A DNA stretch of 64,000 bases from Isurus oxyrinchus (taxonomy: Eukaryota), in the NCBI GenBank assembly GCA_026770705.1, contig JANJGN010000121.1, positions 682,001-746,000 on the forward strand, in the 5' to 3' direction. The number at the start of each line of letters is the position of its first letter. Within the stretch, counting starts at the first letter, position 1. The notes beneath the pieces are model-generated. The model saw nothing but the letters and a program-made list of their open reading frames with translations, was not told where the DNA came from and did not search any database. The position numbers were made by a program, and so were the translations under genes. This document shows positions 1 to 55,397 of this stretch, piece by piece.

Positions 1-2532
1 TTGGAGAGAATTCCAAGGCAAGATCTTCGAAGTTGAAGACTGGAATCCCTCATGACAGAAATAGAGTTTCAGTGAGATTGGTTGACTGACAGTGTTCACT
101 GATGTCCGGGTGGGTTGTTGTGAAATCCATGGGCTCTATCTTGGTCACGTTTACAATTTAATGAGTAGTGTGGCTGTGAGACCACAGTTTGCCTGTTAAT
201 TCACATGAGCTCATATTAATCCAGAGTGTTAGAGTATAAGGTGGATATTGTGAATTATTTTATCTTTCTGAGTTGGTGCAGTAAAGTTTATTTTTGTTTG
301 TTTAAAAGCCATGGAATCTTGTAGCTTTATTCTCTTCACAAGCATCTTAAATCTCAAACCTCGTCTACTTGAAACAAAATATTATTGGTTCCTAACTATA
401 AATTATCAAAAAAAATTGGGTGTCTGTTCCTCCATCAGCAACTCTTCAGAATCCTGCTGAAGTCACGGATATTTCAGAAGGACAGGGAACAAGAGGTTTC
501 TGGTATCAGCGTTTCATGTGGGGCCCAGTTCAGTTTGAACAAATAAACAACACCATCTTTGAAAGTCATGAACCCACCACAGGGGCACCTCCGACACATG
601 CAGAGCTCAGGCGAGAGGCGCTTTGTTAGTGTGTTTCACAGTGTCTGCTGGAGTAGGGTCAGTGCTGAGAGGGTCTGCTCAAGGATCATAACAACCTGCA
701 CTTGCACCTTCCAAGTAATAAGATTTTGTAAATGTATTCATTCATGGGATGTGGGCGTCGCTGCCAAGGCCAGCATTTGCTGCCCATCTCTAATGTCCCG
801 TGACATAATCTCTGTAGCAGAGTAGAGACAATCATGATCACTCAGGATATTTGACATCTATCCACATGAGCAGCTTTACCTTCCTTCTCTCTTTCAGTTA
901 TCTTACTCCCTTATTGAAGTTTCTAGCATGGTGAGAACTGGATGGTTTGCTCGGACATTTCAGAGGAACCACGTTGCTATGAGTCTGGAGTCACATGGAG
1001 GCCAGACCAGATATAGACGGCAGATTTCCTTCCCTAAAGGCCATTAGTGAACCAGATGGGTGTGTATGACAATCGATGATAGTTTCATGGTCTCCATTAC
1101 TGAGACTAACTCCCATTAGTGTAAACAGAGTGAACAGTTTTCCATTGATCCCACCTTTCCCGTTCTCTCCGGTATTTTACACACTATTGCTCGATAATTT
1201 GATTCTGCCAAGGACCCCTTGGAAAATCATGGACCCCAGTTAGACAACCAATGGAATAAGGAATCTCTTTGGATTCTCATTGTCTAAGGAATCTCTTCGG
1301 ATCCTCATTGTCTGAAGAATCTCTTTGTATCCTCATTGTTTAAGGGATTATTTCTGATCCAAACCCCATATTGTTGTATTGTTGATTCCGATGCAGCATT
1401 GTAGACTGACTTGTCCCCAAGCTCAGCACTGACCCTACTCCAGCAGACACTGTGAAACACACTAACAAAGTGCCTCTAGCCTGAGCTCTGCATGTGTCGG
1501 AGGTGCCGCTGTGTTGGTTTCATGACTTTCAAAGATGCTGTTGTCATTTTTTTTGTTCAAACTGAACTGGGCCCCACATGAAGCGCTGATACCAGAAACC
1601 TCATGTTCCCTGTCCTTCTGAAATATCTATGATTCAGCAGGATTCTGAAGATTTGTTGATAAGGATCTAAAATTGTCTGATTGTCGAATGATACAACACA
1701 GGAGGAGCTCATGTGACCCATCGTGCATGTGCTGGCTCTTTCCCAATTCCTCTCCAGCACCTTTCACACAGCCCTGCAAATTTCCCTTCAAGTATTTATC
1801 CAGTTCCCCTTCTGAAAGTTCCTGTTGAATCTGCTTCCACCGCCCTTTCAGGCAGTGAGTCAATGGTCTCTCTCTGAGCTGCAAAGTGCTCAGATTCTGT
1901 GAAATTTAAACTATGCAGCAGATCAGAGACAATCATGATAACTCAGAATATTTGACACCTTTACACACAGACAGTTTTGCCTTTGTTCTCTCTTTCAGTT
2001 ATCTTGCTCCCTTATTGAAGTATCTAGCAAGGTGAGAATGGACAGGAAGTGTGACACTGAACAGCCTGTCTATTCTAGGGGCTGCTGTGTTGTCTTCATG
2101 GGAAATTCTGTCTAAAATCAGCAAAAGACACAAATTTCAGGGCATTGCTATCGGAGACCTCACATTAGGATAGGCTTCATCCATCAGTTTTTATCCCTGC
2201 TTCTCTACTCAACCCATCAATCCCCTTCGCTCACTGACCAACATCCGACAGCAGCTGAATTTTAAGATTCTGCTCTCACTGCTACAAACCTGCCTATCCC
2301 TGTAAACTCCTCCAGCCCCTACAACCCTCCAAGACCTCTGGTCTCCTCCAATTCTGCTGTCAGACAGGGAGTCAGTGTATATCAGTGAACACAGGGGTGA
2401 TGGGTGAATGGGACTTGGTGTGAGTTTGTACACTGGCTCACTGCGGAATCAGTTCCCTATCAGAGCTCAATAAGAATGATCTTTTACAAAGACTATTAAC
2501 CATAAATCTGTCCGAGCTGACGATGGTATTAC

Positions 2533-14047: not shown

Positions 14048-14510
14048 NNNNNNNNNNNNNNNNNNNNNNNNNNNNNNNNNNNNNNNNNNNNNNNNNNNNN
14101 NNNNNNNNNNNNNNNNNNNNNNNNNNNNNNNNNNNNNNNNNNNNNNNNNNNNNNNNNNNNNNNNNNNNNNNNNNNNNNNNNNNNNNNNNNNNNNNNNNNN
14201 NNNNNNNNNNNNNNNNNNNNNNNNNNNNNNNNNNNNNNNNNNNNNNNNNNNNNNNNNNNNNNNNNNNNNNNNNNNNNNNNNNNNNNNNNNNNNNNNNNNN
14301 NNNTCTAGGTGTGTATGTGTGCGTGCGTCTGTGTNNNNNNNNNNNNNNNNNNNNNNNNNNNNNNNNNNNNNNNNNNNNNNNNNNNNNNNNNNNNNNNNNN
14401 NNNNNNNNNNNNNNNNNNNNNNNNNNNNNNNNNNNNNNNNNNNNNNNNNNNNNNNNNNNNNNNNNNNNNNNNNNNNNNNNNNNNNNNNNNNNNNNNNNNN
14501 NNNNNNNNNN
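14048..14510. other. Two assembly gaps (N 14048-14303 and 14335-14510) inside unit B
   Basis: Runs of n. Confidence 0.99.
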
Positions 14511-26273: not shown

Positions 26274-26413
26274 TTAAACAGTCTGTCGACTTCCTTTCAC
26301 TGTTTGTCTCTCCCAGACACAGACTCCAGCGATAGTGATAACCACAGCCACAAGGAATATCACAGCTCGTATTCCCAGGATCAGGATCACGTGCAGAATC
26401 TCTCCTCCACTGT
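26274..26413 (-). pseudogene. Unit C activating-type TM/short-tail exon (SGGEILHVILILGIRAVIFLVAVVITIAGVCVWERQTVKGSRQTV*); frame intact but upstream exons are broken
   Basis: Inverted copy of 46398-46537; acceptor is caag instead of ctag. Confidence 0.8.
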
Positions 26414-37330: not shown

Positions 37331-37499
37331 GCTTCAGTTATTAGGATGGAAATTATATTTATAATCACTGTGCGAGGCACGGCCAGATTTCAATTTGCTT
37401 GCTTTCATTCCTTGCTTTTTCTTCCTTGTTTTTCACCTCATCACCAGTTTATTCAACCCTTGTCACTATTTTAGTTGACCAATGGGTGCGGTTTACATT

Positions 37500-38100
37500 C
37501 CCTCGGTACTGAGCCTGCGACAGTGCAGCATTCCCTTGGTACTTACCCTCCAGCAGTGCAGCACTCCCTCAGTACTGACACTCCGACGGTGCAGCATTCC
37601 CTCGGTACTGACTCTCCAACAGTGCAGCATTCCCTCAGTACTGACCCTCCGAAAGTGCAGCTCTCCCGCAGTACTGACCCTCCGACAGTGCAGCACTCCC
37701 TCAGTACTGACCATCTGACAGTGCAGCTCTGTCTCAGTACTGACCCTCTGACAGTGCAGCACTCCCTCAGTACTGACCCTCTGACAGTGCAGCTCTACCT
37801 CTGTACTGACCCTCTCACAGTGCAGCACTCCCTCAGTACTGACCCTCCAACAGTGCAGTACTCCCTCAGTACTGACCCTCTGACAGTGCAGCACTCCTTC
37901 AGTACTGACGCTCCGATTGTGCAGCACTCCCTCTGTACTGACCCTCTGACAGTGCAGTTCTCTATTAGCACTGACCCTCTGACCTTGCAGCACTCCCTCA
38001 GTACTGACCCTCTGACTATGCAGCACTCCCTCAATACTCACCCTCCAACAGTGCAGCTCTCTCTCAGTACTGACCCTCCGATTGTGCAGGACTCTCAGTC
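37500..38100 (+). repeat. 33-bp satellite array upstream of unit D
   Basis: ~18 units. Confidence 0.92.
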
Positions 38101-38329
38101 CTGACACTGAGTGCTGATCTGGTTTGCCAGCCTGAATTTTGCCAAATGAATCTTGAACAGGTGACCATCCACTCAGAGAGCGAGAGAGGGTTCGAAACCC
38201 AGTGACCCACAGGAGAAATTCCTGGTCAATGACTTTCCACTTTTGAGCAGAAATATCATCACAAGTCCAGAACGCAAAGGGTTAACAGCTTCAAAAAACT
38301 CAAAACATCAGCTGCTCTGTCACTTTGAT

Positions 38330-38916: not shown

Positions 38917-38956
38917 ATGATCGGGAAATCTTACTTCCTCCTGTCACTTCTCCAAG
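38917..38956 (+). CDS. Unit D signal-peptide exon (MIGKSYFLLSLLQ); exon 38884-38956
   Basis: tctttcacag acceptor, CAAG|gtaat donor. Confidence 0.88.
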
Positions 38957-39906: not shown

Positions 39907-40275
39907 TTGGACTGTCACAAGAGTGGAAAGGTGACACTCCACGAGAGGTGACAGCGCAGGAAGGTTCGTGTGTAAAGATTCCATGTCATTACAGTTATCC
40001 ATCACATTTGGAAAGCCAACCACGAGTCGGAATCTGGTTTAATAACGAGAAACACAAATTCGACAATCCCTTTGCCTTTCACTCCAAGGATCACATTTAC
40101 GAGTTACCACGGTTCCACCATCGGACCCGGCGGTCTGGAGACCTGAAAGATGGCGACTGTTCCCTGATTATAAACAGCATCAGACGGGAAGATGCAGGAC
40201 CTTATTTTTTCAGGATAGAATTTGACAATGGTCCGAGCCATAACTATTACCATGTAACCCAGCTTCACGTTTCTG
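39907..40275 (+). CDS. Unit D Siglec-type V-set exon (...WFNNEKHKFDNPFAF...GPYFFRIEF...)
   Basis: ccccag/gtaagt boundaries, 369-bp open frame, essential Arg present. Confidence 0.92.
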
Positions 40276-40960: not shown

Positions 40961-41219
40961 TCTGTTCTCCCCGAGCTGTGAGCTGTTCCTCCACCCTCAC
41001 CCAATCTGGTCAAATCAAGGGTCACTGAGTGAGAGTGTATTAATCTGAGTGACAGAGATTCAACAAGTGTAAAAATAGACAATTCTAAAATGATCATTGT
41101 AACCTCTCAGTTCTGATATCATCCTTATAAAAGTGCTTTCTCTTGTGGGACTGTGGTTTCTATTTGAACTGATGCTTCACGTTATATTTCTCTAAAAGGA
41201 TCCATTCTCTGTCTGTTAG

Positions 41220-41516
41220 ATTTCACAGATAAACCCACGATATTCCCTGCTGAAATTATTGCAGGAAAGCGTGTGGATGTAAGCTGCACCTTCAACACAA
41301 CGTGCAATGGAACAGCAGCACCTGTCTTAACCTGGGACACTCCCACTGACGTACCTGGATCAGTCTCAAACACTGTAACTCAGCATGGTGTCACTCTGAC
41401 CTATACTTCTGTTCTGACCCTGATCCCATCACTCAAACACCACGGACACACTCTCAGCTGCAGAGTGAGATATCCATCTGTTTCATCGAAGCGGACCCTC
41501 GTACTGACTGTGCTAT
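41220..41516 (+). CDS. Unit D first C2-set exon
   Basis: tgttag acceptor, T|gtaagt donor, 297-bp open frame. Confidence 0.92.
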
Positions 41517-41683
41517 GTAAGTACAAACACCCTTCTTTCTACATTAGCTGGAATAGTATCAAATGTGCACAGCAAGCTCCCACATACAGCACTTTGTTTA
41601 CCAACAAACCATTGGTGTTTCACTGGTAAAAAGTGAGCCCTGACAGGCAGTACATCCTTACTACTGACTCTCCGACAGTGCAT

Positions 41684-43420
41684 CATGGACTCATAGACTC
41701 ATAGACACATAGACAGAAGGAGGCCATTTAGCCCATCATGTCCATGCTGGTCAGCAACTCCCTCCCCAAGTGCATCACCTCACATATTTCCAGGTTGAAT
41801 TCCATTTGCGTCTTGATCATTCCTCCTTTATATAAGTCCAATTCATTTATATACACCACAAACAGCAAGTGCCCCAGCACTGAGCCCTGTGGAACCCCAC
41901 TGGAAACAGACATCCAGTCACAGAAACATCCCTCCACCAACACCCTCTGCTTCCTGCCTCAGCCAATATTGGATCCAACGTGCCACTTTGCCTTGGATCC
42001 CATGGGCTCTTACTTTCTTGGCCTCTCTGCCAAGAGGCACCTTATCAAAAGCCTTCCTCAGCCCATGTCGACCACAACAAAGGCATTACTCTCATCAACA
42101 CTCCTGGTTACCTCCTCAAAAGATTTGATCAGGTTTGTCAAACATGACCTTCCCTTAACAAATCCAGCTGAATATCCCAGATTAATCCTTGTCTCTCCCA
42201 GTGCAGATTCATTCTGTCCTTCAGAATTCTTACTAGTAACTTCCCCACCACCGAGGTTAGACTGACTGGCCTGTAATTTCCTGATCTATCCCTTCCTCCC
42301 TTTTTTAATAATGGGACAACATTAGCCATCCTCCAGTCCTCTGGCACCTCACCTGTGGCCAGAGAGGATTTGAAAATTACTGCCAGGGCCCCTGATATCT
42401 CTTCCCTTTCCTCCCTCAACAGCTTTGGATTCATCTCATCTGGGCTTGTGGATTTATCCACTTTTCAGGACACTAAACCCACTAGTACCTCCTCTCTCTG
42501 TGTTAATTTCATCTCATATTTCACAGTCCTCCACCCTGATGTTATACCTGCATCATCCTTTTCCATTGTGAAGACAGATGCAAAGTATTCATTGAGGACT
42601 GTACCCACGTCTTCCAGGTCCACACACACATCACCTCTATGGCCCCTAATCGGCCCCACTCTTTCCCGAGTTATTCTGCTGCTTTTTACATATTTAAAAA
42701 ACCCCTCTGGGTTTTGCTTTATTCTACCCACCAGTGCTTTCTCATGCACTCTCTTATCTTTCCTCATGTCCTTTTTCAGTTCCCCTCTGCACTATTTGTA
42801 CTCCTCTAGGGACTCTGCTGTATTGAGCCCTCAGTATCTGCCATAAGCTTCTTTTTTTTCTCAGTCCTAACCTTTATGTTCCTTGTCTTCCAGGGTTCTC
42901 CAGACTTGGTCTCCCTCTTTGTCTTTACAGGAAGATATCTGCTCTGTACTCTCGCTATTCCCTCCTTGAATGCCTCCCACTGCTCTGACACAGTTTTATC
43001 TGCAAAGAGCTTCTCCCAGTCCACTTGGGCCAAATCATATCTCATCTTAGTAAAATTAGCCTTTCCCCAGTTTAGAATTTTTATTCCCAGCACAAACTTA
43101 TCCTTCTCCATAACTGTCCTAAATCCAATTGAGTTACAGTCACCATCTCCCCTACTGATACGCTTTCCAACTTCCCCGGCGCTTTTCCATATATTAGGTC
43201 CAGAACTGTCCCCTCCCTTGTTGAGCTTTCTATGCACAGACTAAAAATCTTCTCCTGGATGCAACTTCAGAATTTTTCTCCCTCCCTACCTTGCTCACTA
43301 AAGCTGTCCCTGTTAATATTTGGGTAGTTAAAATCCCTGAGTATTACTGCTTTATTATTCTTACACATCTCTGAAATGTGATCACATGTTGGATTGTCCA
43401 TCTCTCCCTGACTGTTTGTT
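41684..43420 (-). mobile_element. Internally deleted CR1 LINE in a unit D intron
   Basis: 'GEVPEDWRMANVVPL..NYRPVSLTSVVGKLL', 'SGVPQGSVLG'; short-repeat tail at 41684-41715. Confidence 0.92.
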
Positions 43421-43974
43421 GGTTTTATATCTTGAGTCTATGAGTTCACTGGTTGAGTAAACTCGAATTGCATTCCTTCATATACACTTGTTAGTTGATA
43501 AAAACAAAAAAACTGCGGATGCTGGAAATCCAAAACAAAAACAGAATTACCTGGAAAATCTCAGCAGGTCTGGCAGCATCGGCGGAGAAGAAAAGTGTTG
43601 ACGGTTCGAGTCCTCATGACCTCAGTTCTGTCGAAGGGTCATGAGGACTCGAAACATCAACTCTTTTCTTCTCCCCCGATGCTGCCAGACCTGTTGAGTT
43701 ATTCTTAGCTGATGCTCGCTATCAATAACCAAGAGAGACCGACATTAGAACAAGCTGATTATTTATTGTAACAGAGGGCAGAGCACTAAATCCTTGCCTG
43801 CTCCCACAACCACCTCCAGCTCCAGACTTACAGTTAACCAGTGGCCCACACTGTCCAGTGATTGGTCAGTACTGTCACATGGTTTATCCACTTGTATTCT
43901 CTTAAAGGTACCTGGCACTCCACATTATCACAGGAGGCCTATAGTACACACATAACAGCATGTTTGCCTCCTCA

Positions 43975-44280
43975 GCACTGACCCTTCTACAGTGCAGCAC
44001 TCCCTCATTACTGTCTCTCTAATAGTGTAATGATCCCTCAGTAGTGCTCCTCCAACATTGCACTGGTCAATCAGAACTGACGCTCTGACTGTGCAGTTTT
44101 ATCTCAGCAGTAACCCTCCTACAGTGCAGCGCTCCCACAGTACTGTCCCTCCTACAGTGCAGCACTCCCTCAGGACTGACCCTCTGACAGTGCAGCACTC
44201 CCTCAGTACTGAACCTCTGGCAGTGCAGCACTCCCTCAATACTGACCCTCTGACAGTGCAGCACGCCCTCAATACTGAAC
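43975..44280 (+). repeat. 33-bp satellite array
   Basis: ~9 degenerate units. Confidence 0.85.
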
Positions 44281-44410
44281 TGAAGTGTCTGCCTGGATTA
44301 CGGGCTATGTGGTGAAAGAACCTACATTGACATCACACCTTTCACATTCTCAGTGTCTTTCAAAGTGCTTCACAGTCAGTGTAAGTTAACTGATCTGTAT
44401 TTGTTTTTAG

Positions 44411-44692
44411 ACGCACCACGGAATCTCTCAATTACTTATCTTGATATGATTAACGCTTCATCGATCAATATAATTGAGGGGAATTCTGCAGTGATAATCT
44501 GCTCTGTCGAGAGCTTCCCAGCTTCTAACCTGACGTGGCGCCATCTTAATGTCCCAATGAACAGAACAAGTTCCAACAATGAGCTGTGGTTGGTGATTCC
44601 TCACGTTACATCCAGGGATACTGGAGAATATCAGTGTGTGGCAGAGAATGAACATGGAGCAGTGGAGGGGTTCCTAACCATTACTGTGGAAT
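44411..44692 (+). CDS. Unit D second Ig exon (YAPRNL...IICSVESFPASNLTW...DTGEYQCVAENEHG...TVE)
   Basis: gtttttag acceptor, T|gtgagt donor, 282 bp; canonical C..W..YxC. Confidence 0.92.
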
Positions 44693-46397
44693 GTGAGTTA
44701 CACAGACTTTAATATTTCTCTCATCTCCGAACACATATACTCAGATGCTCTCCCACACACACACACACAAGCACTCACAAATGTACAGACCCAAAGTGCA
44801 TGCACACACACAATCCCACACTCATGAGCACACAGAAAGACACACTCACACACTAACACAGTAGTACACACTCCCCTGTGAGTTACCTGACCTCCCTCAG
44901 TACTGCACTGGAGAGTTCTCCTGGATTCTGGGATATGTGTTCCCATTCATATTTATCGAAGAATATCCAAATTACGAAGTCTATTCCAGAAACTCACATG
45001 CACAAAGATTCCAACTGATACTCCCCACCTCTCCATGTATCTCTCTCCTCCTTTAAGAAGCTTCCTAATCCCTAACTCTTGCCTGTCCTAACTCCTCCTT
45101 ATAATGCCCTGTGTCAAATTTTTTGAGTATCTGAGAGAAAGGGAGAAATAAGGAAGTTTAGGAAGGGATTTCCTATTAGTGAAGAGCTTACTTCATTTTC
45201 TCACCTTTCCAGTGTTCAGTTTTGCCATCATGTCCAATGACCCTGTTTATAATGGGGGCATCCTATGTAAACGTCACACTGACTTTACGTCCTCCCACCA
45301 GTGGTGGCACTGTGGTGCTTAAGCTTGCACCTCCCTGCTTTTCAGCCAACTTCACTTCACAATTTGCTACACATGCTGTAAGTTCATCGAAATTAACTTA
45401 TATATCAAACAGTAGATTTGATAATACAGTTTATTGAAAGGTTCATCCACGCTCTGGGAAGGGTTTACACTCTCCAGGAAGCAGGAATAGGCTGGATGTT
45501 GGGGAGTTCATCTTTTCCCAGAGAGTAGGGATCCTCGGGAATGTGCTGTCAGTGGGTGTGGTGGTTGCTGTCTCTCTGTTGCCTTCAAGAGGGATCTGGA
45601 GTGGTTACTAACTGGGGGAGAGATCATGGAAGTGGAGAATGATACAGCACAGGAGGAGGCCATTCAGCCCATTGTGCCTGTGCCAGATCTTTCAATGTTC
45701 TATCCAATCAGATCCACTAACCACCACTCCACTTTGCCGCCATCTTCTTCCTTCAAGTGTTTATCCAATTTCCCTTTTGAAAGTTCCTGTTGAATCTGCT
45801 TCCACCGCCCTTTCAGGCAGAACCTTCCAGATCACAACAACTCGCTCTGTCAAAACAAATTCTCCTCATCTCCCCCTCCGGTTCGTCAATCTGTGTCCCT
45901 CTGGTTACCGACCCTCCTGCCCCTTAAATACATCGATACTGTTCACCTCAACCACTCCCAGTGGGAGCGAGTTCCACATTCTCCCCTCTCTCTGGGTAAA
46001 GATTGGAACTGTTTATTAAGCGGGGGGTGTAAGTCCGTGAGGAAGTCCATCTCGATCCTGTCCGATTCGCACACGCGTCCGAGATGGATTTCCACCCTGC
46101 ACTAAACGTTTCCAGAATTTTCTACAGCACAGTCCTGTACACAGTGATGGAGAGAAACATTGGACAGGGAGTCCAACAGCACAATGATCCATTCTCACCA
46201 ATGTTCCACGCTAAGGGGAAAGTTCCGATTGTCCACTCTTAGAGTGTTTACAATGAAAACATTCATTCCACATTGAATCCCAGTGGATGGGTCAATATTA
46301 CAGCAAATGTTGCAGTGATATGAAGCTTGATTGTTCAGCCAGAGTGAGAGATTGAAAGCGGAGAGTCAGTGATGATTTCTTTCTGTGTGTTCTCTAG

Positions 46398-46537
46398 ACA
46401 GTGGAGGAGAGATTCTGCATGTGATCCTGATCCTGGGAATACGAGCTGTGATATTCCTTGTGGCTGTGGTTATCACTATCGCTGGAGTCTGTGTCTGGGA
46501 GAGACAAACAGTGAAAGGAAGTCGACAGTCTGTTTAA
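46398..46537 (+). CDS. Unit D terminal TM exon, activating type: (Y)SGGEILHVILILGIRAVIFLVAVVITIAGVCVWERQTVKGSRQSV*
   Basis: ttctgtgtgttctctag acceptor, phase 1; hydrophobic stretch with internal Arg; short Tyr-free tail; AATAAA at 47519-47524; spliced CDS of 1128 nt (375 aa) is open. Confidence 0.85.
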
Positions 46538-46564
46538 AGATTTGGACAGCAACAATCTCATCAT

Positions 46565-47155
46565 GGAACAGAAGAACGGCATTTGGCCCATCTACTCCAT
46601 GCTGTCTCTCTGTAAAGCAATCCAGTCAGTCCCATTCCCCCGTTCTATCCCCGTATCCCTTCAAGTTTATTTCTCCTCAAGTGTCCATCCAATTTCCTTT
46701 TGAAATCGTTCATTGTCTCCGCTTCCACCATCCTCGTAGGCAGCGAGTTCCAGCTCATTACCACTCGCTGTGTAAAAAAGTTCCTCCTCACATCCCCCTC
46801 TGCCCAAAACCTTCAATCTGTGTCCCCCAGTCCTTGTACCATCAGCTAATGGCAACAGCTTCTCTTTGTCTACCTGATCTAAACCCATCATCATCTTGTA
46901 CACCTCGATCAGATCCCCCCTCAATCTCCTTTGCTCCAAGGAGAACAACCCCAGCTTCTCCAACCCAACCTTGTCGCTAAAATCCCTCATCCCTGGACCC
47001 ATTCTGCTCAATCTCCTCCCCACCCTCTCAAGGACCCTCACTTCCTTCCCAAAGTGAGGAGACCAGAACTGGACACAATACTCTAGTTGTGACCTAACCA
47101 GAGCTTTATAAATGTTCAGCATAACCTCCCTGTGTTTGTACTCAATCCCTCGATT
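46565..47155 (-). mobile_element. CR1 3' fragment, antisense in the unit D 3' UTR
   Basis: Mirror of 25655-26245. Confidence 0.9.
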
Positions 47156-47879
47156 TATGAAAAGCTTATTCTTTCCATCAGCACAAACAGCAATTTCCAA
47201 GCGGACTCCCATCAGCAGACAGAGTGCAATGAAACATCGGCATGCCTGCTTCTTAATGTACGGAGAGAAACCTGGAACGAGAGATTGTCCTTCTTCTCCT
47301 CAGCAAGCTGAAACTTTTCCTTATACCTGGTGCTCCCCAGTCCTGCTGTGTGGACACATCATAACCACGGCATTGTCTGGCTGTGTGCAGCCAACATGGT
47401 CAAATAGGAATGAACAGAAATGTGACGTTGCTAAACTCTGTTCTCTGATTGGAATGTGCTTTCTGAATGCTGCACCTTTTTCATGCTGCGATAGATTGTA
47501 AGAAGCATTTGGGTTATGAATAAAATTACATTGATTAACACAAGTGATTAAAATGCTCAGCCTGTTCTGTAAATATTTATAGATTAAAATTCTTATTTTG
47601 CTGCCAAATTCTTGCCTCAAAGAAAAGCTTCTTGTTGTCACATTTTCTCTATTATATAAATTCCTGTGCCCATCCTTATTATAGAAACTTCCAATGTAAA
47701 CATGTCACATTGTAGTTGCACACTCCTGCCAGTGGTGGTGCCATTCCAAAGCTGTCTTGCTGCACAGACACAGTGAGAAATATTCTCGACGTGTACATGA
47801 TGTTGTTGTTACACGGACATCAGGCGGAATCTTGGGCAGTGCCTAGAATGCACTTAGGGCAGTGCAGACCACACTCAGA

Positions 47880-49230
47880 ACTGACAGTGCAGCGTTTCCT
47901 CAGTGCTGACCCTCCGTCAGTTCAGCGCTCCCTCATTACTGTCCCTCTGACAGTGCTGCACTACCTCATTATTGACCCTTTTCAAGTGCTTCACCCCGTC
48001 ATCATTGACCTTCTGACCGTGCAGGATTCCCTCATGGCTGACAATCTGACAGTGCAACACTCCCTGAATACTGACCCTCTGATACTGTACCCCTCCATCA
48101 CTAATGACTTTCCGACAGTTCAGCACTCCCTAGGTACAGACACTCTGACAGGGCAGCATTCCCTCAGTATTCAAACTCCCACTATGCAGCTGTCCCTCAG
48201 GATTCTCCCCCCCACAGTGCAGCACTCCCTCAGTACTCTCACTCCCACAGTGCAGCACTCCCCCAGTACTCACCCTCCCACAGTGCAGCACTCCCTCAGT
48301 ACTCACCCTCCCACAGTGCAGCACTCCCTCAGTACTCACCCTCCCACAGTGCAGCACATCCTCAGTACTCACCCTCCCACAGTGCTGTGCGAGTTGTTTA
48401 AATCAAGACTGATGCCCAAAGAGGGAGGTTTCAATGCTAAATCATTGAAATCGGAGAACATTATTTTTAGGCTGAGGGGAACTAGACTTAGTTCCTCATA
48501 TCCTTTCTTTAGCAATAACACACAGTACTAGAATCTCTGTTTAAATAAATTCCAGTTAAACTTTGCCATGAAAGGATATCTTCTCACACTCCTCTCTACC
48601 TCAGTAGTAACCCTCCCACAGTCCGGCACCCCCTCAATACTGACCCTCTGACTGTGCAAATCTCACTCAGTACAGACCCTCCGACAGTGCAGCACTCCCA
48701 CATTACTGACCCTCTGACAGTGCATCACTCCCTCATTAAGGACCCTCTTCCAGTGCAACACTCCCACATTACTGTCCCTCTGACAGTGCAGCACTGCCAC
48801 ATTACTGACCCTCTGACAGTGCAGCACTCCTACATTACTGTCCCTCTGACAGTGCAGCACTCGCTCAGTACTGACCCTCCCACAGTGCAGCACTCCCTCA
48901 GTACTATACTCCTGACAGTGAAGCACTCCCTTATTAATGACCCTCTTCCAGTGCAGAACTCCCACATTACTGACCCTCTGACAATGCAGCACTCCCACAT
49001 TACTGACACACTGACAGTGCAGCACTCCCACATTACTGTCCCTCTGACAGTGCAGCACTCCCTCAGTACTGACCCTCCGACATTGCAGCAATCCTTCACT
49101 ACTGGCCCTCTGACAGTGCAGCAATCCCACATTACTGACCTTCTGATAGTGCAGCACTCACTCAGTACTGACCCTCACACAGTGCAGCACTCCCTCAGTA
49201 CTATACCCCTGACAGTGCAGCACTCCTTCA
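47880..49230 (+). repeat. 33-bp satellite arrays (47880-48390 and 48600-49230) upstream of unit E
   Basis: Many tandem units, including a cccacattactg variant. Confidence 0.92.
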
Positions 49231-49454
49231 GTAATGATATCAGGGATTGTCAACATGTATCATACGGCCAGAGACCTGTATTGGGAACTCTATCGCCTGC
49301 GCTTCAGCCTCTGAGGTGAGGGGGAGGGGTCTAATCCCACGGAGCCAATGGAGAAGCTTGATGACTACAGCTGCCCAAATATGAGCTGACAGATCATCAC
49401 ATGGTAAACGTTTTGCTGAGAGCACAAAACATCCTCAATCTTCTCACTGATTAC

Positions 49455-52175: not shown

Positions 52176-52472
52176 ATTTCACAGATAAACCCACGATATT
52201 CCCTGCTGAAATTATTGCAGGAAAGCGTGTGGATGTAAGCTGCACCTTCAACACAACGTGCAATGGAACAGCAGCACCTGTCTTAACCTGGGACACTCCC
52301 ACTGACGTACCTGGATCAGTCTCAAACACTGTAACTCAGCATGGTGTCACTCTGTCCTATACTTCTGTTCTGACCCTGATCCCATCACTCAAACACCACG
52401 GACACACTCTCAGCTGCAGAGTGAGATATCCATCTGTTTCATCGGAGCGGACCCTCGTACTAACTGTGCAAG
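52176..52472 (+). CDS. Unit E first C2-set exon
   Basis: 297-bp open frame, gttag / G|gtaatt. Confidence 0.88.
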
Positions 52473-52796: not shown

Positions 52797-52948
52797 ACAT
52801 CTGAATGTCCAAATGAACAGAACAAGTTCCAACAATGAGCTGTGGTTGGTGATTCCTCACATTACCTCCAGGGACACTGGAGACTATCAGTGTGTGGCAG
52901 AGAATGAACATGGAGCAGTGGATGGGTTCATAACCATCACTGTGGAAC
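52797..52948 (+). pseudogene. Unit E truncated second C2 exon (3' half only)
   Basis: Same lesion as 28089-28240. Confidence 0.85.
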
Positions 52949-55397
52949 GTGAGTTACACAGACTTCAACATCTCTCTCAGATTCGAACACTACACAAACA
53001 CCATCGAACATACACACCTAAATAGACACGTGCAGACACACATATATGACCACACACAAAGACACACTCACACACAAACACTAACACTCACTCCCTCATG
53101 GGTTACCTGACCTCCCTCACTACTGCACTGGAGAGTTAGCCTGAATTCTGGGATTTGTGTTCCCATTCATATTTATGGAAGAATATGGAAATTACTATTA
53201 CAGACACTCAGATGCTTAGAGGCACTCATAGATACTCTCTGCTTCTCCAACTCTCTCTCTCCCTTTAAGAAGCTTCCTGAAACCTAACCCTTTGACGAAT
53301 CACCAACCCAACTCCTCCTTATCTGATTCTGTGTGATTTTCTTTGTGTATCTGAGAGTAAGAGAGAGTTGGAGAGGTTTAGGAAGAGAATTCCTGCTGGT
53401 GAAAAGCTTACATAATGTTCTCACTATTTCCGTGCACATAATTCCCAGTATGTCCAAAGCCCCTGTTTATAATGATGACTGCCTATGTAAACGTCACGCT
53501 GTAGTTACAGCCTCTCACCAGTGGTGGCATTGTAGCCCTTAATCCTTGTGTTTCCCAGCTTTCCCAGCAACTCTACTTCCCAGTTTGCTACACAAGCTGT
53601 GAGTTCTTCGGAATTCAATTGTTTCTCAAACGGTGGATTTGATGTCATTTTATTGAAAACTTCCTCAGTGCCTCCCTGAAGGGTTTACACTCTCTGGGAA
53701 GCAGGAATAGGCTGGATGTTGGGGAGTTCATCTTTTCCCAGAGAGTAGGGATCCTCGGGAATGTGCTGTCAGTGGGTGTGGTGGTTGCTGTCTCTCTGTC
53801 ACCTTCAAGAGGGATCTGGAGTGGTTACTGACTGGGGGAGAGATCATGGAAACGGAGAATGGTACAGCACAGGAGGAGGCCATTCAGCCCATTGAGCCTG
53901 TGCCAGGTCTTTCAATGTTCTATCCCATCAGATCCACTAACCACCACTACACTTTGCCCCCATCTTCCTCCTTCAAGTGTTTATCCAATTTCCCTTTTGA
54001 AAGTTCTTATTGGATCTGCTTCCACCGCCCTTTCAGGCAGCACCTTCCAGATCACAACAACTCGCTCTGTCAAAACAAATTCCCCATCCAGTTCGTCAAT
54101 CTGTGTCCCTCTGGTTACCGACCCTCATGCCCCTTAAATACATCGATACTGTTCACCTCAACCACTCCCTGTGGGAGCGAGTTCCACATTCTCCCCTCTC
54201 TCTGGGTAAAGATTGGAACTGTTTAGTAAGCGGGGGGTGTAAGTCCGTGGGGGAGTCCATCTCAATCCTGCCCGATTGAGCCAGTGAGCCAGTGTACAAA
54301 CTCACACCAAGTCCCATTCACCCATCACCCCTGTGCTTACTGATACACACTGACCTCCTGTCTGACAGCAGAATTGGAGGAGAGCAGAGATCTCAGAGGT
54401 TTTTAGGGTTGGAGGAGGTTACAGTGATAGAGAGTGTAGAGGGGGGATGGTGTGGTAAGAAATCAATGATGAGAATTTGAAATTTGAGTCATTGCTGGAC
54501 TGAGAGTTAGTGTAGGTCAGCCAGTGACAGGGCAGCGATCGGCTGAATAGAAAATCAGGGATAAAAACTGGGGGATGAAGTCTATCCTGATGTGAGGTCT
54601 CCGATAGCAATGACCTGAAATTTGTGTCCTTTGCTGCCTTTATTCAAAATTGCCCATGAAGACAACACAGCAGCTCCTAGAATAGACAGGCTGTTCAGTG
54701 TCACACTTCCTGTCCATTCTCACCATGCTAGATACTTCAATAAGGGAGCAAGATAACTGACAGAGACAAGGGAGGCAAAGCTGTCTGTGTGTAGAACTGT
54801 CAAATATTCTGAGTTATCATGATTGTCTCTGACCTGCTGCAGAGTTCAAATTTCACAGAACATTAGCACTTTGCAGCTCAGAGAGAGACCATTGACTCAC
54901 TGTCTGAAAGGGCGGTGGAAGCAGATTCAACAGGAACTTTCAGAAGGGGAACTGGATAAATACTTGAAGGTGACATTTTGCAGGGCTGTGGAGGAGAGAG
55001 CAGAGGTGAGAGTGGGACTAATTGGACAGATCTTTCAAAGGCCCAGCACAGGCTCGATGGGCCAAATGGCTTCCTTTTGTTCCCGATCATTCTACAATCT
55101 GATAAATTAAGACCCACATCAATAACTCTTAAGGCTCCAGCTGCAGGGATGGATCTTTGAGAAGGACAGGGAACAAGAGGTTTCTGGTATCATTTTCAAT
55201 TTTATTGACAATTACATAACAGTATAGATTTGTTGAATATTTGAGTGTCTAAAGAGTAGAGGTAATCTGCACTTACGCCCAGATCTTGTGTTGGTAACCT
55301 TGTCTGGAGGTGTCTTTAAATGCTCACAGTGATCTGTGGGATTGTCATTCTTGGATGTTGTCCCTGGTTTCAATTGGCATTTTACCCTTGATGCAAT

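What the first reader, a model, noticed from the sequence alone, without database searches (positions are those of the whole stretch)
46398..46537. Hidden activating TM exon with an intramembrane Arg completes an intact gene D
Seen: a phase-1 exon missed by the ORF track encodes ILHVILILGI-R-AVIFLVAVVITIAGVCVW followed by ERQTVKGSRQSV*. With it, L-V-C2-C2-TM reads as one open frame. Established: a basic TM residue with a short tail indicates coupling to an ITAM adaptor, either DAP12 (Siglec-14/15/16) or FcR-gamma (N-proximal Arg, as in LILRA, OSCAR, NKp46). Inference: the Arg sits in the N-terminal half of the helix, so FcR-gamma coupling is possible, which would be atypical for a Siglec.
Basis: partly seen in the sequence, partly recalled or inferred. 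Interest (0 to 1): 0.8.

Follow-up and report, generated by a model that had tools for sequence, protein, structure and literature searches.

The report
Shark Siglec arginine membrane-anchor exon
This short stretch is the last coding exon of a shark Siglec-type immune receptor gene and gives it a membrane anchor with a buried arginine and almost no tail, the usual build of an activating receptor, a design that automatic annotation already shows in other sharks.

Summary
46398-46537 (+) follows a good acceptor (ttctctag|AC), is read in phase 1, and encodes SGGE, a 29-residue hydrophobic stretch with one Arg (codon 46442-46444), a 12-residue tyrosine-free tail and TAA.

All five exons of gene D are open with canonical splice sites: leader 38917-38956, V 39907-40275, C2a 41220-41516, C2b 44411-44692 and TM. 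They total 1128 nt.

The exon type is real.
- 15 annotated proteins from 8 shark species end in the same anchor, at 62-93% identity, and all 15 hold LGIRA.
- Contigs from 4 of 4 public runs (kind only guessed as RNA; two related organisms) join a C2a exon exactly to this exon.

Limits:
- Those contigs are not from gene D itself. They carry AAG where D has TAT.
- The joint shown is C2a to TM, skipping C2b. No C2b-to-TM joint appeared among the 15 joints shown.
- The closest annotated relatives are V-C2a-TM.
- Which adaptor binds could not be tested, so the FcR-gamma idea stays open.

This scan already found and followed up the same exon type on other DNA of this genome. It is a new member of a known kind.

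The parts
38917..38956 (+). Leader exon of gene D (MIGKSYFLLSLLQ, donor AAG|GTAATA, phase 1)
   Evidence: The ATG, coding letters and donor are conserved in 4 copies in the window (D, E and two on the minus strand).
39907..40275 (+). V-set exon (Siglec-type, with FFRIE arginine and three Cys)
   Evidence: Pfam V-set 3.8e-10 and Ig_CD22 2.5e-9. The 18 best solved-structure matches are all Siglecs, and FFRIE aligns to FFRVE of Siglec-5. Open frame with canonical sites.
41220..41516 (+). First C2-set exon (C2a). Its donor TAT|GTAAGT is derived; the paralogs have AAG|GTAA
   Evidence: Pfam C2-set_2 3.5e-8. Exon ends and comparison with the paralogs.
44411..44692 (+). Second Ig exon (C2b), complete only in gene D; inclusion in D's mRNA is not shown
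   Evidence: Pfam Ig_3 4.9e-13 and I-set 6.1e-11. Acceptor tttttag|AC and donor AAT|GTGAGT. Copies C and E match only from 44543 onward.
46398..46537 (+). Terminal coding exon: stalk SGGE, membrane span with Arg, 12-residue tail, TAA
   Evidence: Homologous C-termini in 15 shark proteins. Joint to this exon start in 4 of 4 runs.
46421..46483 (+). Best 21-residue hydrophobic core (VILILGIRAVIFLVAVVITIA)
   Evidence: mean Kyte-Doolittle 2.95; lowest Hessa-type sum.
46442..46444 (+). CGA codon of the intramembrane arginine
   Evidence: The Arg is invariant in 17 of 17 aligned anchors.
26274..26413 (-). Near-identical copy of the TM exon in the broken paralog C
   Evidence: tblastn 44 of 45 residues and 138 of 140 nt. 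Gene C's V and C2a exons carry stops.

Best explanation
46398-46537 is the genuine last coding exon of gene D, one of a cluster of Siglec-like Ig receptor genes in a shark genome. Spliced in phase 1 behind an Ig exon, it supplies a short stalk, one membrane span with a conserved arginine about a third of the way down, and a 12-residue tail without tyrosine. By analogy with mammalian activating receptors (inference), the arginine pairs inside the membrane with acidic residues of a dimeric signalling chain. That chain would give surface expression and signalling. Gene D would then be the activating partner of the neighbouring inhibitory-type gene, which has an uncharged TM and ITIM-like tails. 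Shown here: the exon, its frame, the family-wide conservation of the anchor, and its splicing in relatives. Inferred: adaptor coupling, which adaptor it is, expression of this particular copy, and whether C2b is included.
For: The sequence and frame are correct. The Arg lies inside the hydrophobic core. It is the only TM-like segment on the + strand between D's Ig exons and the next gene (4 segments on +, 3 on -, in the whole window). phmmer of the 45-residue exon product gave 9 real shark proteins carrying the same anchor, E 2.2e-13 to 3.5e-4. In total, 15 of 64 fetched proteins carry it, from 8 species, and all 15 hold LGIRA; RefSeq names them CD33-like, Siglec-11/12/13/14, CD22-like, sialoadhesin-like and SLAMF9-like. 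The anchor is far better kept than the ectodomains: P0006 has V 32% against TM 74%, and P0004 has Ig 31% against TM 80%. The joint 41513>46396 with one letter between occurs in 4 of 4 runs from 4 studies and 2 organisms. It resolves to the C2a exon end joined exactly to 46398. The V exon is Siglec-like. An inhibitory-type neighbour has V 82% and C2a 97% identical to D.
Against: No run of the window's own organism was found: the best share of words was 0.46, and no listed run is on record as RNA. The contigs that show the joint carry AAG where D has TAT and differ at 5 letters in the TM part, so they come from orthologues or paralogues. The joint seen skips C2b. No 44692>46398 joint is among the 15 joints shown, and 99 more were not shown. 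The exon is no better conserved than its flanks against copy C: 138/140 in the exon, 198/200 upstream and 185/200 downstream. That comparison therefore gives no sign of selection, and copy C belongs to a broken gene. Adaptor binding was not tested.
Confidence: 0.7

Rival explanations
1. The exon is used, but gene D's main product is the two-domain form L-V-C2a-TM. C2b would be skipped, so the reader's L-V-C2-C2-TM model is wrong or only a minor isoform.
For: The C2a>TM joint occurs in 4 of 4 runs. Six annotated models join C2a directly to this anchor, including all three from Carcharodon carcharias, the closest relatives found. In the window, copies C and E have lost the 5' half of C2b. Of 55 further C2b-bearing shark proteins, 0 end in the Arg anchor. 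The split codon is TAC either way, so skipping stays in frame.
Against: D's C2b exon is complete and open, scores as an Ig domain, and has a strong acceptor and donor. A C2a>C2b joint exists in run X1. Models P0002 and P0003 join a C2b-type exon to this anchor.
Confidence: 0.3
2. Gene D is a silent or decaying recent duplicate, and the exon looks intact only because the duplication or gene conversion is young.
For: The exon lies in a 96-100% identical block (about 45443-47992) shared with the broken gene C, with no extra conservation over the flanks. D's C2a donor changed from AAG|GT to TAT|GT. There is no read evidence from the same organism.
Against: All five exons are open with canonical sites over 1128 nt, whereas copy C has already gathered stops and a frameshift. 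GTAAGT remains at the changed donor.
Confidence: 0.15
3. One reading: the arginine couples to an FcR-gamma/zeta-type chain rather than to DAP12, which would be atypical for a Siglec.
For: The basic residue is Arg, not Lys. A 2026 review states that DAP12 partners use a central lysine, while gamma/zeta partners use an arginine (PMC13107469, passages). The Arg is in the N-terminal half of the span.
Against: The same review places the gamma/zeta arginine near the top of the span and notes a central Arg for NKG2D-DAP10. Here the Arg is residue 8 of 21, or 11 of 29. Akula et al. 2014 found no FcR-gamma homologue in shark genomes (PMC4016189, passages), though on older assemblies. Human Siglec-14 pairs an Arg with DAP12 (recalled, not from a call).
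Confidence: 0.25

Closest known systems
RefSeq gene models of other sharks, e.g. [quoted passage not shown]
   Same: They have the same anchor and tail (TM exon product 91-93% and 82% identical), the same V and C2a exon types, and the same stop position.
   Different: These models are V-C2a-TM, whereas gene D has an intact C2b exon between. D's V is only 83-84% identical, and D has Leu-Tyr where they have Gln-Asp at the C2a/TM junction.
Human Siglec-14, the activating partner of Siglec-5 (properties recalled, not from a call)
   Same: It is a Siglec ectodomain with a TM arginine and a short tail, next to an inhibitory gene with a near-identical ectodomain. D's V exon has Siglec-5 as its best solved-structure match.
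   Different: No orthology is shown, the TM sequence is unrelated by any search here, and adaptor use in sharks is unknown.
Siglec-15, the conserved activating Siglec of vertebrates
   Same: It is a Siglec with a basic TM residue that couples to DAP12/DAP10 (PMC7226832, passages).
   Different: Siglec-15 uses a lysine and is a single conserved gene. D's V matches it more weakly (E 9.1e-9 against 7.9e-14 for Siglec-5), and D sits in a fast-duplicating cluster.
Other shark receptor families with the same anchor: CD22-like (P0004, P0005), single-V 'sialoadhesin-like' (P0006), SLAMF9-like (P0007, P0009)
   Same: They carry the ILGIRA..IF...V...CV anchor at 62-80% identity.
   Different: Their ectodomain builds differ (Pfam) and show little or no sequence likeness to D outside the anchor.

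Membership tests
Siglec (I-type lectin) | N-terminal V-set domain with the conserved arginine in the F-strand motif | tested here: met
   Pfam V-set and Ig_CD22 score above their cut-offs. GPYFFRIE aligns to GSYFFRVE of Siglec-5 chain 2zg2_A. That this is the sialic-acid-contacting Arg is recalled.
Siglec (I-type lectin) | Characteristic cysteines of domain 1 (CxxxxC near the start, Cys in the E strand) and an extra Cys in domain 2 | tested here: met
   SCVKIPC and DCSL align to LCVLVPC and NCSL of Siglec-5. C2a has SCTFNTTC. The disulfide pattern itself is not testable here.
Siglec (I-type lectin) | C2-set domains following the V domain | tested here: met
   C2-set_2 3.5e-8 for C2a; Ig_3 and I-set for C2b.
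Siglec (I-type lectin) | Binding of sialylated glycans | not testable with these tools
   This needs expressed protein and glycan binding assays.
Adaptor-coupled activating immunoreceptor | Basic residue inside the membrane span | tested here: met
   The Arg is at residue 8 of the best 21-residue hydrophobic window and is invariant in 17 of 17 aligned anchors.
Adaptor-coupled activating immunoreceptor | Short cytoplasmic tail without tyrosine motifs | tested here: met
   The tail is ERQTVKGSRQSV, 12 residues with no Tyr.
Adaptor-coupled activating immunoreceptor | Arg-dependent association with DAP12, DAP10 or FcR-gamma/zeta | not testable with these tools
   No adaptor sequence could be brought in and there is no complex prediction tool. 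Literature passages only.
Paired activating/inhibitory receptor locus (Siglec-5/14 type) | Neighbouring gene with a near-identical ectodomain but an uncharged TM and ITIM-type tail | tested here: met
   The minus-strand gene has V 16030-15701 at 82% and C2a 14921-14685 at 97% identity to D. Its TM is at 12383-12291, and its tails at 6807-6538 and 9700-9431 hold LLYANPQVF and TEYAQIRF. That these exons form one gene is inferred.
Expressed exon of gene D itself | Reads of the same organism joining D's Ig exon to 46398 | tested here: inconclusive
   The joint is seen in 4 of 4 runs, but in contigs of related organisms that carry AAG instead of D's TAT, and it runs from C2a, not C2b.

The most novel reading that the evidence does not exclude
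One arginine-bearing anchor cassette (..ILGIRA.IF...V...CV..) is shared at 62-93% identity by at least four differently built Ig receptor families across three orders of sharks, while their ectodomains have diverged to 30% or beyond recognition. This would mean that sharks spread a single adaptor-docking exon among receptor families by exon shuffling or conversion. It would also mean that they built paired activating/inhibitory Siglec-like clusters independently of the mammalian CD33-related Siglecs, perhaps on an adaptor other than FcR-gamma, which one paper could not find in sharks.
Probability: 0.3. Interest if true: 0.55.

Novelty: new member of a known kind. Interest (0 to 1): 0.3.

Why it matters
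The exon turns gene D from an apparently anchorless set of Ig exons into a complete candidate activating receptor, beside an inhibitory-type gene with a nearly identical ectodomain. The paired-receptor logic known from mammalian Siglec-5/14 is therefore also present in a shark gene cluster. A teleost paper states that fish genomes lack CD33-related Siglecs and does not treat sharks (PMC7226832, passages). Five literature searches found no paper on activating Siglecs of sharks. The family therefore exists only as automatic annotation. The practical value is modest: a better gene model and a defined arginine to mutate. The wider point is the shared anchor across receptor families, which this scan had already noted elsewhere in the genome.

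Tried and rejected
- Selection test within the window: I compared the exon with its copy in gene C. The exon (138/140) is no better kept than the flanks (198/200 and 185/200), so the test is uninformative.

- Other membrane anchors for gene D: none lies on the + strand between 44692 and the next gene.

- Pfam on the exon product: only chance-level rows (E 0.11 and 0.18).

- Adaptors in sharks: the literature gave only Akula 2014 (no FcR-gamma found, older assemblies). The searches and the findings look-up gave nothing useful.

- Repeat nature of the flank and intron ORFs: this is weak. There was one RVT_1 row at E 0.0098, below the cut-off, and 0 families for three other ORFs. I do not claim a named transposon.

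- The window's own protein in the databases: no row marked as window-encoded appeared.

- Exons were translated, scanned and searched one by one.

- Supplements: supplementary files of papers were not opened. Supplementary file 9 of PMC8455134 may list shark Siglec families.

Full report
WHAT IS THERE

The window is vertebrate DNA with a cluster of Siglec-like Ig receptor genes on both strands. tblastn of gene D's exon products against the window finds:
- six V-type exons (39948, 50990 and 63107 on +; 16030, 17213 and 30055 on -);
- four C2a exons (41273 and 52229 on +; 14921 and 28808 on -);
- one complete C2b exon (44413) and two 3' halves (52798 on +; 28236 on -);
- two copies of the exon in question (46400 on +; 26411 on -).

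Two runs of N (14048-14303 and 14335-14510) were left alone.

THE EXON

A pyrimidine tract and AG (46396-46397) precede 46398. From 46400 the frame reads SGGEILHVILILGIRAVIFLVAVVITIAGVCVWERQTVKGSRQSV and then TAA at 46535-46537.
- The C2b exon ends at 44692 (AAT|GTGAGT) with one spare base, so T+AC makes Tyr.
- Taken one by one, the leader (38917-38956), V (39907-40275), C2a (41220-41516), C2b (44411-44692) and this exon are all open with canonical sites. They sum to 1128 nt.
- The leader was found by comparison of four paralogous copies.
- The Arg (CGA, 46442-46444) is residue 8 of the best 21-residue hydrophobic window, and residue 11 of the 29 residues between the flanking Glu.
- The tail has no tyrosine.
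- No other TM-like segment lies on the + strand between D's Ig exons and the next gene.

IS THE EXON TYPE REAL?

phmmer of the 45 residues against 1.84 billion representatives gave 10 proteins at E<=1e-3 (best 2.2e-13).
- One (P0008) is a repetitive chance match.
- Nine are shark Ig receptors that carry this segment, eight of them at the C-terminus. The ninth, P0010, carries it internally in an odd-looking model.

Their source names are CD33-like, Siglec-11/12/13, CD22-like, sialoadhesin-like, SLAM family 9-like and 'hypothetical'. They come from Scyliorhinus torazame, Chiloscyllium punctatum and plagiosum, Hemiscyllium ocellatum, Rhincodon typus and Mustelus asterias.

A word search with the best hit added Carcharodon carcharias and Scyliorhinus canicula models.
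- Of the 64 proteins then held, 15 have the anchor and all 15 contain LGIRA.
- In the 17-row alignment (15 proteins plus the two window copies) the invariant letters are L, ILGIRA, IF, V and CV.
- The closest are three C. carcharias models: TM 91-93%, C2a 94-97% and V 83-84% identical to D.
- The anchor is kept far better than the ectodomains: P0006 has V 32% against TM 74%, and P0004 has Ig 31% against TM 80%.
- Pfam confirms that these proteins have different domain builds.

READS

No run of the window's own organism turned up. The best holder had 0.46 of the sampled words, and no listed run is on record as RNA. I laid four contig sets on 41200-46700: X1 and X7 of organism A, X5 and X6 of organism B, from four studies.
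- All four show one contig with a joint 41513>46396 and a single letter between.
- Read against the sequence, this is the C2a exon joined exactly to 46398. The contigs have AAG where gene D has TAT as the last three letters of C2a.
- In the window, the paralogs E, C and the inhibitory-type gene all have AAG, and D alone has TAT.
- The contigs also differ at 5 letters in the TM part.
- They stop matching the window just after the stop codon, at 46543 in organism B and 46558 in organism A.

They therefore show that the exon type is spliced at the predicted acceptor in relatives. They do not show that gene D is expressed. X1 also has a C2a>C2b joint (41513>44409, the same one-letter offset). No joint from 44692 to 46398 is among the 15 joints listed, and 99 further joints were not shown. 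X1 and X6 also hold unspliced contigs across the acceptor (records 8 and 23).

C2B IN OR OUT?

Six annotated models join C2a straight to the anchor: P0001, P0012, P0013, P0015, P0016 and P0017. Two join a C2b-type exon to it (P0002, P0003), and P0010 does so in the odd model mentioned above.

A second word search with the C2b+TM part of P0002 gave 58 proteins among 234 candidates. Of the 55 that were new, none ends in the Arg anchor. They end in uncharged anchors and ITIM-like tails, or are partial.

In the window, copies C and E match D only from 44543 onward, so they lack the 5' half and the acceptor of C2b. D's C2b is complete, scores as an Ig domain and has good splice sites. Both isoforms stay in frame, because the split codon is TAC either way. 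I rate inclusion of C2b as somewhat more likely than not, but it is not shown.

CONSERVATION WITHIN THE WINDOW

D and C share a block from 44543 to 48286. The exon is 138/140 identical, the 200 nt before it 198/200, and the 200 nt after it 185/200. This reflects a young duplication or conversion and says nothing about selection. Copy C belongs to a gene with stops in V and C2a and a frameshift in V.

WHAT IT MOST LIKELY DOES

The V exon is Siglec-type.
- Pfam V-set and Ig_CD22 score above their cut-offs.
- The 18 best of 51 solved-structure matches are all Siglecs: Siglec-5, MAG, Siglec-8, CD33, sialoadhesin, Siglec-7, Siglec-10 and Siglec-15.
- FFRIE and the cysteines align to Siglec-5.

A basic residue in the span plus a short tyrosine-free tail is the accepted mark of a receptor that needs an acidic, dimeric signalling chain (general knowledge; review PMC13107469, passages read).

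On the minus strand lies an inhibitory-type relative.
- Its V is 82% and its C2a 97% identical to D's.
- Its uncharged TM is at 12383-12291.
- Two tail cassettes hold LLYANPQVF and TEYAQIRF.

Gene D therefore looks like the activating half of a paired locus.

WHICH ADAPTOR?

The review passages say that DAP12 partners use a central lysine, that gamma/zeta partners use an arginine near the top of the span, and that NKG2D-DAP10 uses a central arginine. Here an arginine sits about a third of the way down, which fits none of these cleanly. Akula et al. 2014 report no FcR-gamma homologue in the shark genomes then available (PMC4016189, passages).

KNOWN OR NEW?

Automatic annotation of at least 8 shark species already predicts proteins with this anchor. 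Earlier follow-ups of this scan reached the same reading for the same exon type on other pieces of this genome, including the point that several receptor families share it. I re-derived both points here from my own searches.

In the held literature I found no paper on activating Siglecs of sharks. The searches were:
- Siglec+shark+DAP12;
- Siglec+cartilaginous fish+evolution;
- Siglec+elasmobranch;
- CD33-related Siglecs+fish+Siglec-15+evolution;
- DAP12+elephant shark.

From these I saw listings and abstracts. I read passages of PMC8455134, which only lists Siglecs among Ig families, and of PMC7226832, which deals with teleosts only.

VERDICT

This is a new member of a known kind, of modest interest.

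Noticed in passing
window 41514-41516 against 52467-52469, about 28570 (-) and about 14683 (-): Gene D alone has TAT as the last three letters of the C2a exon. The three paralogs and the contigs of all four runs have AAG. This weakens the donor context and changes Gln-Asp to Leu-Tyr at the junction.
   Followed up: partly
window 52798-52947 (+) and 28236-28090 (-): Paralogs E and C keep only the 3' half of the C2b exon. Homology to D starts at 44543, and about 295 bp of unrelated sequence lies between C2a and this remnant, so they cannot include C2b.
   Followed up: partly
window 54277: Homology between gene E and gene D's C2b-TM intron ends at 54277, and no copy of the Arg anchor exon follows. 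Gene E therefore has no anchor exon of this type in the window.
   Followed up: partly
window 12383-12291, 11338-11213, 9700-9431, 8250-8125 and 6807-6538 (all -): There is an uncharged TM exon and two tandem copies of a two-exon cytoplasmic cassette with LLYANPQVF/L and TEYAQIRF motifs. The second copy has a stop just after the splice region in the tblastn frame.
   Followed up: partly
window 33982-33869 (-): An isolated exon resembles a different tail type (DDLYANCDF..SVYGNL) found in C. carcharias and Cetorhinus models.
   Followed up: no
window 37475-38107, 43968-44315, 47716-48531 and 48596-49233: Long arrays of a roughly 33-nt repeat read as ..HSLSTDPPTVQ.. in one frame. The arrays flank the genes of the cluster and reach very high contig depth in all four runs.
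   Followed up: no
window 46538-46560: Contigs of related organisms stop matching the window 6 to 21 letters after the stop codon. Copies D and C of the window agree with each other beyond that point, so the 3' UTR of this species differs from that of its relatives, perhaps through an inserted repeat.
   Followed up: partly
P0038 (Hypanus sabinus): A stingray Siglec-like model ends in a different anchor that also holds an arginine (..ISLAVRGVLF..) with a short tail. Rays may therefore have an unrelated activating anchor.
   Followed up: no
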